A stretch of DNA of 64,000 nt from Vitrella brassicaformis CCMP3155. Taxonomy: Eukaryota; Protista; Chromerida. The notes below the pieces were generated by a model. It was given only the letters and a program-made list of their open reading frames with translations. It was not told the DNA's origin and did no database searches. Made by a program: the position numbers and the translations under genes. This document shows, in pieces, positions 54,330-60,784 of the stretch (position 1 is the stretch's first letter; every line of letters begins with the position of its first letter). The DNA is taken from the NCBI GenBank assembly GCA_001179505.1, contig CDMY01000418.1, positions 17,365-81,364 on the forward strand. The letters are read 5' to 3'.

Positions 54330-57300
54330 TCATTCATTCATTCATTCATTTGCGTTTCCTATGAATGCATGAAAATGCATCCATGGAAACGATATAGCAG
54401 GCCTGCAAAGACGAGGCAGGGACCAGGGCGGATGTTTGGCGCACCAAGGTTTCCCGGATTGGACATGGAGGGTGGAGGGGGAGAAGGGTGGATGGAAGAG
54501 AGAGAGAGGTCCGCGAGACGCTCAGGTGCACAGAGAGGCGCCTGCAGGCACACAGGAGACCCAAGAGGCAGCAGATGTGTCGATCGATCTTGTGTACATA
54601 TGTGTGTATGTATACATCTCTATGGATGTGTGTGAGTGGGCCTTCCTGTCAATGTGTGAGTACCTGGGTGAGTGAGTGAGTCGTCCGTCATCGGCTGAGT
54701 GAAGCAGCGCGTCCTCATGACAGTCAAAACTGTCAGAAAACGCCGCACAGACCTGAGTCAGACACAGAGTGAGAGTTTGAGTGCGTTTGCCTGTCATTTT
54801 CCCATCTGATTGACCTCTCACCGTGTCGAGCGTGACAAGGCGACCTCGCTAGGGTACGTGGCTGGGCAGGGCGAGTCGATAGTCCGAGAGAAAAAGGCGG
54901 TCAGTTCGCCGACAGACAGAATCGGTCTGAAGCAGACTGACGGTGGTCGCGCCGGGGAGCAGGCGGGTGGGCCGATAGTTAGAGGGTGTCAATGGCTACT
55001 GTGTGGTGTGGTGGCCGTGCCTTGGGACAGCTTGGCTGAGGCGCCACAACTCACCCACAGATGTGACATGGGTGTTTCTCCGCGGGGACGACGGATGGCG
55101 GGATGGGGTGGTGTGCACGATGTTCAGAGCAACACGCTTGACAAGTCGAGTGCCATCTTTGCCTAGCTGCGACCCCTCTGTGCCGAGTTGAGGTGTCCCT
55201 TCAAAGGTTACCCATGGCTAGCTCCCCGGCAACGCATCTCGGCACCACCATTGCAGTGATTTTGAATGCCCATGAGTACGCCCACCACATGCACACATCG
55301 TTAGGCAACCAACCAAAACGAACACCCGGTCCAGAACGCTGCGGGGCTGCCCAGCTTGTATACTTCCCCTGGGCCGGGGGAGGTGGTGTGCCAGGTATAT
55401 GTCGTGCGTGTACGCGTCTGTCTCGCGCTTCGTGTTCGTGTTGTGTGTGTACAGGTAAGTGTTCTTCTCTGTCTGTNNNNNNNNNNNNNNNNNNNNNNNN
55501 NNNNNNNNNNNNNNNNNNNNNNNNNNNNNNNNNNNNNNNNNNNNNNNNNNNNNNNNNNNNNNNNNNNNNNNNNNNNNNNNNNNNNNNNNNNNNNNNNNNN
55601 NNNNNNNNNNNNNNNNNNNNNNNNNNNNNNNNNNNNNNNNNNNNNNNNNNNNNNNNNNNNNNNNNNNNNNNNNNNNNNNNNNNNNNNNNNNNNNNNNNNN
55701 NNNNNNNNNNNNNNNNNNNNNNNNNNNNNNNNNNNNNNNNNNNNNNNNNNNNNNNNNNNNNNNNNNNNNNNNNNNNCTCTCTTCCCTTATCATCTGCTGA
55801 TGGCTAGATGACCCATCGATGGTGGTGCGGATGTTGCGACTACTGACGGATGGGATACATGGTGTGGACGACAGACTTGTGTCCATATACGTGTGTATCT
55901 GAAGGCTCATCCCTTCATTGATTTGTCCTTGCGTGGGTTCATGCACCGTGTGTCATCATGCACACAACACCAATACGGACACACACAGGCCGATGGGCCA
56001 GGCTTGGCAACCCTGGCTGGCAACACCTGCGCATGCATTCCTCAGCCAACCCTGCTGGGGCCCGAACACACCCAAATTCTACCACTAGACACCCTGATTG
56101 GCTACAGATGCTCGGATAGAGACATCGATGCATCGAGAGACATTTAGATCGGATCAGACAGACACGCACTGTATGTGGTGTGCTGTTGGCTTATCATGGG
56201 GTCTCAGGCCGTCACAGCCGCACCGCTACATGCGGACAAACAAGTTGCCATTTTGTGTGTCTCGTGACACGGCCAGTGTGACACACGGAGTAGTGATCGC
56301 TTGTCAACCTCCCTGCCGCAGATGCATTGCTGCGAGACGGTCGCACCATCAATATGCATGCGGGAGGCTGATGCCGGGACACTCGGCTGAAGCCAGGGCA
56401 AGTCAAGCAGAGCAGGAGGCCCGCTCTGAGGCATCCAAGGGGGTCCCCGGAAGTGGCTGCGGTGGGGGGGGGGNNNNNNNNNNNNNNNNNNNNNNNNNNN
56501 NNNNNNNNNNNNNNNNNNNNNNNNNNNNNNNNNNNNNNNNNNNNNNNNNNNNNNNNNNNNNNNNNNNNNNNNNNNNNNNNNNNNNNNNNNNNNNNNNNNN
56601 NNNNNNNNNNNNNNNNNNNNNNNNNNNNNNNNNNNNNNNNNNNNNNNNNNNNNNNNNNNNNNNNNNNNNNNNNNNNNNNNNNNNNNNNNNNNNNNNNNNN
56701 NNNNNNNNNNNNNNNNNNNNNNNNNNNNNNNNNNNNNNNNNNNNNNNNNNNNNNNNNNNNNNNNNNNNNNNNNGGGGGGGGGGGGGGGGAAGGGGGGCCG
56801 CGGCCAGGGAGGGGCCGCATGAGCGATCGTGACCGTCGCGATCGTTCACGCCCGACATGGGTTGTTCACAACTGAGATGGCGTCTTTTCATGATCACATG
56901 CCGCTGTCTCCCACCACCGCCAGACAGACGAGAAAATGAAGACAGCCACTTTCTGGCGCCATCAGCACGGCAAAGCGCCAGCTAAACGACGCCCTGCTCC
57001 TTTCTACTGCCCGACTTAGCACCTCGGACTTGTCTTTCCTTTACCCTCCTCACGTGCTCGGCCCGTGTTTCCTTCACAAGGCACGCAACCGCCCTCAAAG
57101 TGCATCGCTACACAACACACTTGCCTCCGTTGTAAGCGCATGGCTGCTGCACGACGCCTTGCTTTGTCCGATCCCTACACATCACTCCACTGCCCCCTTT
57201 TTCCCCTCGGACTTGTCTTTCCGGGAATAAAAAGCCACTACAATACACCTTCCGCTTAACTCGGTGCAGAGAAAATGCACGGCATCCTGTACTCTCGGCG

Positions 57301-59591
57301 CACAGCTGGGCACATTTCGTCCGGTCGTGATTGGCCTGTGCCTCCTCTGTAAAAGCCACGTAACCGCCTTCATAGCGCACTCCTTCTTTCCATACAAAAC
57401 TTGTGCCTCCGTCGCAGGCAACATCGGTTAGTTCTGGAAGAGGTCTACCGGGCAAAAACTTTTTGCTATAAGATTCGGAGTCTTGAGGAGCTGAGATGGC
57501 GATGTCATCTTCGGCGCGGGAGATGGACAGGGTAAGATAGCCATTTGCATCCGTGGCATTTGATCCAGCTATCACGGCCCTCTCGGGCCGGAAATGAGCC
57601 TCATTGCCGAGAAATGTGTGAGTGCTGGCCGTCCATCGGGACGTGTTCAAGCCACTAAAGTCGTCAGTCCATCTGAGAGTGAAACCTGAGCGAGACAGCC
57701 ATAAACTGCGCTTCCTGTCCTTTCTTTCCTCTTCAGACCTTTGGAAAATGGTTCGTAGTCGTACACCCTCACATAGTCGTAATACACGGTGAGTGGTAGC
57801 TTAGCGTTTTTCCGATCGAAGATTCCAGCCCAGTGCTCGGCCCATGGCATTGACGGATCGAGTGGCCACACGGACATCCTGAGATTCATCGCCTTGTTGA
57901 GCCGGGCGACTTGAGGGCTGCACTCTTCCGCGTCTGCTCCGCGAGCATCGCAGGACACTTCGTGGCGTAGGCGGTGTCCATCAAAATACCATGAAACGTA
58001 GCTTGGCGTCCACTCGATAGCAAAGTGATGAAAACTATCTTTTATGGCTTTCATTTGTGCATTCATGTTCTTTCGGTGGCGCGGAGCGGCAAGAAACATC
58101 TCGGACAGGGTGCGCCGTCCCATGTTGCCTGTTACAATGTTGGTCTGAATCGGTTCCGCGCTGTGTTTCCCCATGCCGTGCACTTCAAAGTCAATCTCCG
58201 TCCACGATGTGCCCGGCACTTTGTCACTGTCATTCTTGTAGAGGAAGAAGGCAACGAGGGTTCCATTAGCGCGGAGGTCAGGAAACAGGCGGGTCTCGAA
58301 CCGTCCATACTTGAAAGTCTCCACGGTGGCTACCTCTGCAGCGTCGAACTTGCGTCCACAGTCGCCGTAACACGACCCTACAGCCAGGCACGAACAGTCA
58401 GGTCGGAAAGGAGAGTAGAAATTGAAGGGGACGGCCGCTTACCTCCTGCTCCAGGACAGCGGCACACGCCGGTATCATGGGACACCTGGAACGAGACAGA
58501 AGCATTGTGCCGACGGCCGATGAGCGGATCACAGGTTCCGCTTCTTAGGTCGCAGCTTATGGCATCTCCTGGTGCGCCGGTGTCGCTGTCGGCGATGCAA
58601 AGCCCACGTTGCTGCACAAAACTTGTCAGTGTGACCAAAGCCAACACCGTGACGTTCGAATGAAGAAGGTGCCCTCGTTTCATAAGACGTATGCATCCCT
58701 TAACGGTTCGTAACTGCGATGAAAAAATAAAAAAGAAAAGCTGCACAGACGCCCCAGATTTGCCTCCAGATTTGCGCATGGACGTGATGCAAACACTACA
58801 AACAAACGACTCCCTGACAAACTTGAGCTCCACCAGGACGAAACAAGTGAAACTGGTTTTCCAGCTCCATTTGAGCTGGAAAACCAGTTTCGTCCTGGTG
58901 GTGTAGGGAGGCACGTTCTTGCCATCCAGAGTGTCCGTTCGTAATTGGGGCCAAGCTAGCAATCCTTTCTGTTTCGGTGTGAGGCTTTGCATGCCGCCTG
59001 CTGCGGGGAGATTTGTGGATCTTTGCAGTGCCTTGAAGCCGTGAGTTTGTTATCCGATGTCTCTTCCTCTTTCCAACTTTTCCCACTCACGCATCACGCA
59101 CCACCTCCCTCTCGTGGCCTGTCGATTTGTTGAACCTCAAAATGTCGACAGGTCAACCATTCACCTTGTCCATGATTTTCTCTTCCAACTCACCCAGTCT
59201 ACCATATCACCCAAACCCCCCTTGTGTGCACTCTACTAGACTAGTAGAGTGCACATAGTCTAGTAGAGTGCACACAAGTCAAGGATTCATTCATTCATTC
59301 GCGTCTCCTGTGAGCGCATGAAAACGCATTCATGGAAACGGTCTAGCAGCCCTGCAAAAACGAGGCAGAGACCAGGGCGGCGAGTCCGGCTCACCAAGGT
59401 TTCCCTTGGCTACCCCTGGGTTTCGAAGAAAAATGCCAGTCCGTTTTCACCCCGATGGCGCGGGGCTGCCCTGCTTGTATACGTCCCCCGGGCGAGGGGA
59501 GACCCTGCTTGTATACGTCCCCCGGGCGAGGGGAGGTGGTGTGCCAAGTATATGTTGTGGGGGTGCGTGTACGCGTCTGTCTGGCGCTTCG
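54330..59591 (+). repeat. Diverged direct-repeat blocks: 54330-54450 with 59285-59405, and 55340-55430 with 59460-59591
   Basis: Shared TTCATTCATT...GCATGAAAA...CATGGAAACG...CACCAAGGTTTCCC and GCGGGGCTGCCC...GTATAC...AGGTGGTGTGCCA...GTACGCGTCTGTCT. Confidence 0.8.
57108..58683 (-). CDS. GH16 beta-1,3-1,4-glucanase-like enzyme, circularly permuted, with signal peptide, two introns and a C-terminal PAN/apple-like domain
   Basis: KFDAAEVATVETFKYGRFETR, FFLYKND, WTEIDFEV (ExDxE), FHHFAIEWTPSYVSWYFDG, YDYVRVYDY, then after intron 57686-57738 FTLRWTDDFSGLNTSRW...TFLGN...GYLTLSI. 3' end approximate. Confidence 0.9.
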
Positions 59592-60084
59592 NNNNNNNNN
59601 NNNNNNNNNNNNNNNNNNNNNNNNNNNNNNNNNNNNNNNNNNNNNNNNNNNNNNNNNNNNNNNNNNNNNNNNNNNNNNNNNNNNNNNNNNNNNNNNNNNN
59701 NNNNNNNNNNNNNNNNNNNNNNNNNNNNNNNNNNNNNNNNNNNNNNNNNNNNNNNNNNNNNNNNNNNNNNNNNNNNNNNNNNNNNNNNNNNNNNNNNNNN
59801 NNNNNNNNNNNNNNNNNNNNNNNNNNNNNNNNNNNNNNNNNNNNNNNNNNNNNNNNNNNNNNNNNNNNNNNNNNNNNNNNNNNNNNNNNNNCCCCGTTCG
59901 CTCAGTTGTCTCTGTCTGACTTGCAATCAATCACTATTCCTTACTCGCTATTTTCACCTAAAACAGCCGTCGGGCGTGCAGCCGTGTGTAGCACAGTCAC
60001 AGCCATCAGCATGCATGTGCATGCCCGCACCTCTGTGTGTGTGGTGTGGTCAGTCAGTCGTGTGCCTGCCTCCCTGTCCTCGAG

Positions 60085-60360
60085 TAAGTCATGCAGCTAC
60101 GCTCACGCACATACCCACATCAAGCCAAACCATCCATCCATCAGTCAGTTTGTCTGTCTGTCTGTCTGCTTGCGGCTATGCGGCTGCTCTGTCCCTGGCA
60201 ATACCCACCTCCCTGCCCTCGAGTCAGTCGTGCAGCTACGCTCACGCACATACCCACATCAAGCCAAACCATCCATCCATCAGTCAGTTTGCCTGTCTGT
60301 CTGTCTGTCAGTCTGCAGCTAAACGGCTGTTCGGTCCCTGGCAATACCCACCTTCCTGTT
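60085..60360 (+). repeat. Tandem duplication of a ~140-bp unit with CCAT/CTGT microsatellites
   Basis: GCAGCTACGCTCACGCACATACCCACATCAAGCCAAACC...CCCTGGCAATACCCACCT occurs twice. Confidence 0.85.
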
Positions 60361-60784
60361 CTCGAGTTAGTCAAGGATTGATGATCCATGATGTTGCCGC
60401 GTTTTGTCCGACGGTGTCCGTGTCCGATGTGCTATGAGTAATTGCACAAAGCTCGGATGCTGGATGAAGTGTTGCTGGTGAGTGAGAGTGAGTGTTTGAT
60501 TGGGTGTGTGAAGGTTCTCTGTCACTGAAGGCTCAAGCTATCTCTGTTCGCACACGCGGAGGACTGCCCATATCAACGACTGACTGTCTGTCTCGCGGAT
60601 GGACACGCACAGATGAATCAACGAATCAACGAACGAACGACGAACGACGAATCGACGAACGGAGGAACGAACGAGCGGGTTGATGGACACACCTAGCTGC
60701 TGCTTATAGCAACTGGCCTGAGCCTGCCTGTTCGATGCGAATCAACACAGGGAGTTCGAAACAACGAAAAACGAACGAAACAAC

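What the first reader, a model, noticed from the sequence alone, without database searches (positions are those of the whole stretch)
57108..58683. Circularly permuted, Fibrobacter-type GH16 glucanase in an alga-like eukaryote, with introns and a PAN domain
Seen: the segment that normally starts GH16 licheninases (WTDDF..L...RW....TF.GN...) comes AFTER the DYVRVY strand, joined by a clean 53-bp intron, and the protein starts at the AAEVAT...YGRFE strand. Established (from memory): the Fibrobacter succinogenes 1,3-1,4-beta-glucanase is a natural circular permutant with this order and similar motifs (GAELYT..VQYGKFEAR, FLYQNGS, SNIITG, EWTPNYV, FTLDWTDNF). Inference: horizontal acquisition from bacteria followed by intron gain and PAN fusion, implying a mixed-linkage or other beta-glucan substrate in this organism's biology.
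Basis: partly seen in the sequence, partly recalled or inferred. Interest (0 to 1): 0.8.

Follow-up and report, generated by a model that had tools for sequence, protein, structure and literature searches.

The report
Permuted bacterial-type glucanase gene in Vitrella
A spliced, transcribed gene of the alga Vitrella brassicaformis (a photosynthetic relative of malaria-type parasites) encodes a secreted beta-glucan-cutting enzyme with the rare "circularly permuted" chain order known from the rumen bacterium Fibrobacter; it is most likely an old bacterial gene that the alga has multiplied and given a binding domain of its own.

Summary
The minus-strand gene 58683..57108 has three exons. Both introns (65 and 53 bp, GT..AG) are absent from RNA-derived contigs of three runs and present in a DNA run. 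The product (485 aa) is: signal peptide, Cys-rich stretch, GH16 domain, divergent PAN/apple tail. The GH16 domain is collinear over its whole length with the permuted Fibrobacter succinogenes 1,3-1,4-beta-glucanase (sequence E 2e-24; AlphaFold model TM 0.85-0.88). The catalytic EIDFE motif and 17 of 22 checked cleft residues are kept.

The organism is Vitrella brassicaformis CCMP3155. The gene is public as an unnamed "GH16 domain-containing protein" (P0169), but that model has an unsupported third intron that removes the PAN tail. Vitrella has at least 14 paralogs forming one clade (99/94). I saw no other eukaryote with this type, whereas more than 500 bacterial species in about a dozen phyla have it (29-36% identity).

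Bacterial ancestry with later intron gain, duplication and PAN fusion is the best reading. However, no donor is resolved, and AU tests do not reject Vitrella lying outside all the bacteria (p 0.34-0.41). The substrate is untested. This scan had already noted the family on other pieces of this genome.

The parts
56845..58697 (-). Transcribed span (mRNA contig), with both introns removed
   Evidence: X1 record 1 (1735 nt) lies on 58697..58442, 58376..57737 and 57683..56845. X2 and X6 show the same joints.
58443..58683 (-). Exon 1: start codon, signal-peptide-like N-terminus (about 58683..58609) and a Cys-rich stretch ending CRCPGAG
   Evidence: identical to P0169 aa 1-81. There is no Pfam hit. 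The signal peptide is judged by eye (hydrophobic VTVLALVTLTSFV); no predictor was run.
58378..58442 (-). Intron 1, 65 bp, GT..AG, phase 1
   Evidence: joint 58376->58442 (cut +1) in X1, X2 and X6, absent from DNA run X3. Paralog P0217 has an intron at the same position.
57739..58377 (-). Exon 2: main part of the GH16 beta-jelly-roll, which in standard GH16 is the C-terminal two thirds
   Evidence: Pfam PF00722 1.5e-18. Aligns to PDB 3AXD/1MVE residues 5-173 at E 2e-24.
58184..58198 (-). Catalytic motif E141-I-D143-F-E145 (EXDXE, no beta-bulge)
   Evidence: Aligned to E56/D58/E60 of the Fibrobacter enzyme. Codons were read.
57686..57738 (-). Intron 2, 53 bp, GT..AG, phase 1, in the linker before the transposed segment
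   Evidence: joint 57683->57737 (cut +2) in X1, X2 and X6, absent from X3. Paralogs P0001, P0217 and P0005 have an intron at the same place.
57516..57685 (-). Start of exon 3: the transposed segment (FTLRWTDDF...LTLSISR), which is N-terminal in standard GH16
   Evidence: Aligns to 3AXD residues 182-229. It is collinear in alignment A1 and in the AlphaFold/Foldseek result.
57177..57416 (-). Divergent PAN/apple-like domain (six conserved Cys, with a C-x3-C-x5-C core)
   Evidence: PAN_1, PAN_4 and PAN_2 hit at 5e-4 to 7e-3, all below threshold. hhalign against bona fide PAN domains of paralogs gives 92% probability, E 7e-7. The AlphaFold model is poor and Foldseek finds nothing.
57108..57176 (-). 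C-terminal tail and TAG stop (57110..57108)
   Evidence: RNA contigs are contiguous across the whole of exon 3.

Best explanation
This is a genuine, expressed nuclear gene of Vitrella brassicaformis. It encodes a secreted, 485-aa modular enzyme made of a signal peptide, a short Cys-rich stretch, a GH16 beta-jelly-roll catalytic domain in the Fibrobacter-type circularly permuted order, and a divergent PAN/apple module. Shown: the exon structure, its transcription and splicing, the permuted topology, the intact EXDXE triad (E141 nucleophile, D143, E145 acid/base by homology), and a largely conserved aromatic/polar sugar cleft. Inferred: it works as a retaining endo-beta-glucanase, most likely on beta-1,3-1,4 (lichenan-type) or related beta-glucans, outside the cell. 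The PAN module would act as a binding or tethering module in place of the CBM and T9SS modules found on bacterial homologues. A plausible role is remodelling or opening the alga's own wall or sporangium, or digesting foreign glucan. Evolutionary reading: one old acquisition of a permuted bacterial GH16, followed by spliceosomal intron gain, expansion to at least 14 paralogs, and fusion to eukaryotic adhesion modules (PAN, C-type lectin, trefoil). Some paralogs have lost the acid/base residue.
For: Gene, splicing and expression: (three runs from at least two studies show both joints; the DNA run is unspliced). The public protein P0169 has the same two junctions. Permuted GH16: Pfam; collinear PDB alignments; AlphaFold pLDDT 88.7. 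The top nine Foldseek hits are all F. succinogenes glucanase entries aligned over their full length (TM 0.82-0.88). Engineered permuted Bacillus enzymes come next (0.80), and standard-order Bacillus enzymes reach only about 0.55. Active site: 17 of 22 checked positions are identical to the Fibrobacter enzyme; the changes are V18F, E47D, Q81R, N139S and W203H, four of which also occur in bacterial homologues. Organism and family. Vitrella forms a single clade: 99/94 and 99/93. Bacterial distribution: 524 or more species across Fibrobacterota, Bacteroidota, Ignavibacteriota, Calditrichota, Myxococcota, Gammaproteobacteria, KSB1 and others. Rooted on standard-order GH16s, Vitrella sits inside the permuted bacterial radiation (58-row clade, 99/92). 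Long residence in the eukaryote: the linker intron is shared by four paralogs, and gene GC (0.54) matches window GC (0.556). PAN.
Against: There is no biochemical data, and specificity within GH16 cannot be read reliably from sequence at 31-36% identity. N139S, W203H and three Vitrella-specific insertions lie in or near the cleft. AU tests do not reject trees with Vitrella outside all permuted bacteria (p 0.41; p 0.34), so the tree alone does not prove the direction of transfer. Names were checked for only 30 of the 150 listed hits. The nearest non-Vitrella sequence (P0143) is from a metagenome contig of unclear origin. PAN is below Pfam thresholds and its fold model is poor. The signal peptide was judged by eye.
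Confidence: 0.8

Rival explanations
1. Vertical inheritance: the permuted GH16 was present in an early alveolate or eukaryote ancestor and was lost everywhere except Vitrella, or the bacteria received it from eukaryotes.
For: With a midpoint root, Vitrella is sister to all the bacteria. AU tests cannot reject Vitrella outside all permuted bacteria. Divergence within Vitrella is deep, 28-74% identity.
Against: No other eukaryotic source appears, whose libraries include EukProt and MMETSP. Metagenome hits reach at most 36% identity. The type occurs in 524 or more bacterial species in about a dozen phyla. The ML tree rooted on standard-order GH16s nests Vitrella within the bacteria at 99/92.
Confidence: 0.1
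2. Bacterial contamination or a mis-assembled bacterial fragment in the algal assembly.
For: The best matches outside Vitrella are all bacterial.
Against: The gene has two spliceosomal introns that are removed in transcripts. GC equals that of the window. There are at least 14 paralogs on scaffolds up to 614 kb. Paralogs are fused to PAN, C-type lectin and trefoil domains. Intron positions are shared among paralogs.
Confidence: 0.01
3. The protein is a glycan-binding or transglycosylating wall protein rather than a hydrolase, or it acts on a substrate other than mixed-linkage glucan (for example beta-1,3-glucan or another algal wall polymer).
For: GH16 includes transglycosylases and many specificities (PMC6827312). 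Paralogs P0008, P0010 and P0109 have lost the acid/base residue and must be non-hydrolytic. The window copy carries N139S and W203H and clade-specific insertions. No report of mixed-linkage glucan in Vitrella was found.
Against: This copy keeps the full EXDXE triad and most cleft residues of a strict lichenase. Its closest solved structures are all 1,3-1,4-beta-glucanases.
Confidence: 0.3
4. Independent (convergent) circular permutation within the Vitrella lineage, starting from a standard-order GH16.
For: An intron sits exactly at the junction linker, as exon shuffling might leave.
Against: Bacterial homologues have the same order, the same junction and a short linker in one uninterrupted ORF, and they are the nearest relatives by sequence and by tree. 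Standard-order GH16s are more distant.
Confidence: 0.02

Closest known systems
Fibrobacter succinogenes 1,3-1,4-beta-D-glucanase (PDB 1MVE, 1ZM1, 2R49, 3AXD/3AXE, 3H0O, 3HR9), the natural circular permutant of GH16
   Same: Same segment order and junction, same jelly-roll fold (TM 0.85-0.88), the EXDXE triad, and 17 of 22 cleft positions.
   Different: Only 30-32% identity. The Vitrella clade has three specific insertions, one with a conserved Cys pair. It also has a eukaryotic signal peptide, a Cys-rich N-terminus, a PAN tail and two introns. It belongs to a separate deep clade rather than being close to Fibrobacter.
Bacillus/Paenibacillus licheninases (GH16_21; PDB 1GBG, 1MAC, 3O5S, 1BYH) and the engineered permuted forms 1CPM, 1CPN, 1AJK and 1AJO
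   Same: Same fold and catalytic motif without a beta-bulge. The engineered permutants show that this order folds natively.
   Different: The natural Bacillus enzymes have the standard order, so they align only in part (TM about 0.55; E 1e-10 against 1e-24).
Vitrella brassicaformis paralogs (P0001, P0002, P0005-P0008, P0010, P0064, P0109, P0130, P0217, P0224)
   Same: Same permuted GH16 and the same linker intron. Several carry PAN domains.
   Different: Identity is 28-74%. Some are much longer, with several PAN, C-type lectin or trefoil domains. P0008, P0010 and P0109 lack the acid/base Glu.
Chytridiomycota (rumen fungal) GH16_21 licheninases
   Same: Another eukaryote carrying a bacterial-type licheninase subfamily member (PMC6827312).
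   Different: Those have the standard order as far as I recall (from memory, not tested here), and they come from a different lineage and habitat.
PAN/apple modules of apicomplexan micronemal adhesins (for example the Eimeria tenella PAN module, 1HKY)
   Same: Same Cys-knit small binding module in a related (alveolate) lineage. 1HKY had the highest TM among the weak hits (0.41/0.49, E 2).
   Different: The match is not significant, and here the module follows an enzyme domain.

Membership tests
Glycoside hydrolase family 16 (Pfam PF00722) | Profile match above the curated threshold | tested here: met
   Exon 2 scores 67.3 bits against a cut-off of 22.
Glycoside hydrolase family 16 | Beta-jelly-roll fold | tested here: met
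   AlphaFold pLDDT 88.7, pTM 0.89. 171 PDB matches at E<=1e-3; all 50 listed are GH16 or engineered GH16 enzymes.
Licheninase-type GH16 (GH16_21-like) | EXDXE catalytic strand without a beta-bulge | tested here: met
   EIDFE at 58198..58184. The criterion comes from PMC6827312.
Licheninase-type GH16 (GH16_21-like) | CAZy subfamily assignment (SSN at E 1e-55) | not tested
   No CAZy/SSN tool was available. At about 30-36% identity to the bacteria, this may be a separate subfamily.
Licheninase-type GH16 (GH16_21-like) | Strict beta-1,3-1,4-glucan 4-glucanohydrolase activity (EC 3.2.1.73) | not testable with these tools
   Only cleft conservation could be checked (17 of 22 positions).
Fibrobacter-type circular permutant | The standard N-terminal strands (FTLxWTDxF...LxLxLT) follow the DYV+VY strand in one collinear chain | tested here: met
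   Single collinear stretches cross the junction in the big search. Foldseek's sequential alignment covers the full length only for permuted structures.
PAN/apple domain | Pfam PAN model at or above the gathering score | tested here: not met
   PAN_1 20.0 against 21.4; PAN_4 20.4 against 27; PAN_2 16.9 against 21.1.
PAN/apple domain | Homology to bona fide PAN domains, and the Cys pattern | tested here: met
   hhalign against PAN domains of paralogs gives 92% probability, E 6.8e-7, with C-x3-C-x5-C aligned. Those paralog PAN domains are above threshold.
PAN/apple domain | PAN fold | tested here: inconclusive
   The AlphaFold model of the tail has pLDDT 52, and Foldseek finds no significant hit.
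Horizontally acquired bacterial gene | Patchy eukaryotic distribution against a broad bacterial one | tested here: met
   Vitrella only, against 524 or more bacterial species.
Horizontally acquired bacterial gene | Recipient clade nested within donor diversity with statistical support | tested here: inconclusive
   The ML tree nests it at 99/92, but AU p is 0.41 and 0.34.
Horizontally acquired bacterial gene | Not contamination | tested here: met
   Spliced transcripts, shared introns and native GC.

The most novel reading that the evidence does not exclude
The Vitrella clade is a new eukaryotic GH16 subfamily. Its expansion, with active copies carrying PAN tails and catalytically dead copies on long PAN/C-type-lectin surface proteins, would mean that a mixed-linkage-type beta-glucan is a structural or recognition polymer in chromerid biology. 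It would also mean that a captured bacterial glucanase was turned into a glycan-recognition head for PAN-type adhesins of the kind later used by apicomplexan parasites.
Probability: 0.15. Interest if true: 0.7.

Novelty: new variant of a known kind. Interest (0 to 1): 0.45.

Why it matters
As far as the libraries searched show, this is the first natural circularly permuted GH16 in a eukaryote, in a lineage used as the free-living reference for apicomplexan parasites. It shows a bacterial wall-degrading enzyme being domesticated through introns, a signal peptide, Cys-bearing insertions, and PAN and lectin fusions, then expanded into a family that includes probable pseudo-enzymes. It gives a concrete, testable handle on what beta-glucans chromerids make or encounter. 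It also corrects a public gene model that lacks the PAN tail. It does not open a new mechanism: the fold, the permutation and the chemistry are all known.

Tried and rejected
- **Bacterial contamination:** rejected by the splicing evidence.
- **Convergent permutation:** rejected, because bacterial homologues share the junction.
- **Viral vector:** no relatives in IMG/VR.
- **Closer environmental relatives:** a metagenome scan with Vitrella-specific patterns gave nothing above 36% identity.
- **Donor lineage:** three careful trees, with a laminarinase-type outgroup and with eight standard-order outgroups, gave no stable bacterial sister. Both AU tests were non-significant.
- **PAN fold:** AlphaFold plus Foldseek failed because the model was poor.
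- **N-terminal Cys-rich stretch:** no Pfam hit.
- **Rfam on 55000-60500:** nothing.
- **Literature:** no paper on a Vitrella GH16, on permuted GH16 in eukaryotes, or on the Fibrobacter residue numbering was found in the held library. Residue roles in the Fibrobacter enzyme are therefore partly from memory, supported by mutant names in PDB titles.
- **PHROGs on the neighbours of P0143:** nothing useful.
Full report
**What is there**

On the minus strand, an ATG at 58683 opens a three-exon gene that ends at TAG 57110..57108.
- Exon 1 is 58683..58443.
- Intron 1 is 58442..58378 (65 bp, GT..AG, phase 1).
- Exon 2 is 58377..57739.
- Intron 2 is 57738..57686 (53 bp, GT..AG, phase 1).
- Exon 3 is 57685..57108.

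The conceptual product is 485 aa (80 + 1 + 212 + 1 + 191).

**Transcription and splicing**

I laid contigs of four public runs on 56800-59400. Runs X1, X2 and X6, from at least two studies, hold contigs that skip exactly the two introns. One 1735-nt contig of X1 covers 58697..56845 with both introns removed and no mismatches. Run X3 covers the introns and the untranscribed upstream DNA, so it is genomic. The same contigs are contiguous across all of exon 3.

**Identity of the organism and the public model**

Word searches identify the genome as Vitrella brassicaformis CCMP3155 (Alveolata, Colpodellida). The gene is public protein P0169 (388 aa), labelled only "GH16 domain-containing protein". 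P0169 has the same two junctions and is identical to my reading up to ...KKFLP (aa 372). After that it takes an additional predicted intron of about 140 nt (about 57449..57310) and ends in another frame. The RNA contigs do not show this intron, so the dominant product keeps the C-terminal PAN-like domain that the public model lacks.

I searched them by reference and used P0169 (aa 82-350) as the contiguous reference for the catalytic domain.

**The permuted GH16 domain**

- Exon 2 matches Pfam GH16 at 1.5e-18.
- Against PDB sequences, the six best hits are all the F. succinogenes 1,3-1,4-beta-glucanase (E about 2e-24). Exon 2 aligns to residues 5-173 and exon 3 to residues 182-229, so the match is collinear with the natural permutant. 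Standard-order Bacillus licheninases reach only about 1e-10 and align in part.
- An AlphaFold model built on a 16-sequence alignment has pLDDT 88.7 and pTM 0.89.
- Foldseek, which aligns sequentially, ranks the nine Fibrobacter entries first (TM 0.82-0.88 over 263-271 columns). The engineered permuted Bacillus enzymes 1CPM and 1CPN come next (TM 0.80), and standard-order enzymes reach only about 0.5-0.59.
- The catalytic strand is E141-I-D143-F-E145 (58198..58184).
- Of 22 positions I checked against the Fibrobacter enzyme, 17 are identical. These positions are the catalytic residues and the cleft aromatics and polars. Their roles are partly from memory, but the numbering is confirmed by mutant names in PDB titles. 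The changes are V18F, E47D, Q81R, N139S and W203H; F18, D47, R81 and H203 also occur in bacterial homologues.

This copy therefore looks catalytically competent. Compared with the bacteria, the Vitrella clade has three insertions, one bracketed by two conserved cysteines.

**The other modules**

- The N-terminus looks like a signal peptide (by eye). It is followed by a Cys-rich stretch with no family match, and its CxCPGxGGxCxGxCGR end is shared by paralogs.
- The C-terminal roughly 80 residues hit three PAN models just below threshold. They carry six conserved cysteines with the C-x3-C-x5-C core.
- This tail aligns to above-threshold PAN domains of Vitrella paralogs with hhalign probability 92%, E 7e-7.
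- The fold test failed because the model was poor (pLDDT 52) and Foldseek found no significant match.

I take the tail as a divergent PAN domain with moderate confidence.

**Distribution**

- A full HMMER scan of 1.84 billion representatives with paralog P0001 gave 551 hits, 227 of them at E<=1e-10. Almost all are single stretches crossing the junction, so they are permuted.
- The best hits are Vitrella paralogs. Together with the later searches I count at least 14.
- The best non-Vitrella hit is from a Chitinispirillales bacterium (Fibrobacterota) at 38% identity.
- In one-genome-per-species bacterial data, 524 or more loci encode collinear relatives at 29-36% identity. They come from Fibrobacter, Cytophagales, Bacteroidales, Cellvibrio, Sorangium, Ignavibacteria, Calditrichia, KSB1, Zixibacteria, Marinimicrobia and others.
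- No other eukaryotic source appeared in any search that shows sources.
- There are no viral relatives.
- A metagenome scan with Vitrella-specific patterns found nothing above 36% identity.

Names were checked for only 30 of the 150 listed hits.

**Phylogeny**

- In a careful ML tree (83 rows), the 12 Vitrella sequences form one clade at 99/94. With a 13th paralog and eight standard-order outgroups (92 rows), support is 99/93.
- Rooted on standard-order bacterial GH16s, an FCB-type permuted group branches first. Vitrella, plus one long-branch metagenome sequence (P0143), is then sister to a group containing Fibrobacter, Cellvibrio, Sorangium and Bacteroidales. The joint clade has support 99/92.
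- AU tests do not reject the alternative with Vitrella outside all permuted bacteria (p 0.41 and 0.34).

Bacterial ancestry therefore rests mainly on distribution, and no donor is identified.

**Age in the eukaryote**

- The linker intron (…SKG|FTLRW…) is shared by the window gene, P0001, P0217 and the more distant P0005.
- The intron at CPGAGG|SCYG is shared with P0217.
- Gene GC equals that of the window.
- Paralogs diverge down to 28% identity. They carry PAN, C-type lectin and trefoil domains, and three have lost the acid/base Glu.

Because bacterial homologues have the same order in one ORF, the intron at the junction did not create the permutation.

**Mechanism proposed**

Shown by homology: a retaining GH16 active site. 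Inferred: a secreted endo-beta-glucanase, probably lichenase-like, with PAN as a binding or tethering module. It would act on the alga's own wall or sporangium, or on foreign glucans. Neither specificity nor role is tested.

**Novelty**

The protein is public but uncharacterised. I found no paper on it or on permuted GH16 in eukaryotes. PMC6827312 notes GH16_21 members only in bacteria and a few chytrids. Earlier notes of this scan describe paralogs on other pieces of the same genome and reach the same reading. This is therefore another member of a family that the scan has already found.

Noticed in passing
window 57259-57449 (minus strand): The public gene model P0169 splices out about 140 nt (about 57449..57310) and ends in another frame, which deletes the PAN tail. 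RNA contigs of three runs are contiguous there, so the public 3' end looks mis-annotated.
   Followed up: yes
proteins P0015, P0184, P0190 (metagenome/NCBI, bacterial-looking lipoprotein N-termini): These show a third GH16 topology. Profile positions 127-233 come first and 7-126 second, so the break point differs from both the standard and the Fibrobacter order.
   Followed up: no
paralogs P0008, P0010, P0109 (Vitrella): The acid/base Glu of EXDXE is replaced by Q, T or A. These long PAN/lectin proteins probably bind glycan rather than cut it.
   Followed up: partly
L081:1915-2835 (protein P0143): This is the nearest non-Vitrella relative in the trees (98/70, very long branch). The protein has a signal-like N-terminus, a poly-Q run and extra cysteines. 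The neighbouring ORFs on the 3.5-kb contig match nothing, so bacterial, viral or eukaryotic origin is undecided.
   Followed up: partly
window 58849-58891 and 59221-59278: Two perfect palindromes (19-nt arms with a 5-nt loop; 23-nt arms with a 12-nt loop) lie in the untranscribed DNA upstream of the gene. The first sits inside a longer imperfect inverted repeat.
   Followed up: no
window 59344-59400: A short stretch is held by many contigs at high depth, with diverse loose ends in all four runs. It looks like a multi-copy repeat next to the N gap at 59592.
   Followed up: no
proteins P0260, P0262, P0263, P0268 (metagenomes): These roughly 760-aa proteins combine glycosyltransferase-25 and sulfotransferase-like domains with a C-terminal standard-order GH16, an unusual architecture.
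   Followed up: no
STD_P0128 / STD_P0269 in the trees: Some standard-order GH16s fall next to or inside the permuted radiation (P0128, P0269). The permutation may therefore have arisen or reverted more than once, or these long branches may be misplaced.
   Followed up: partly
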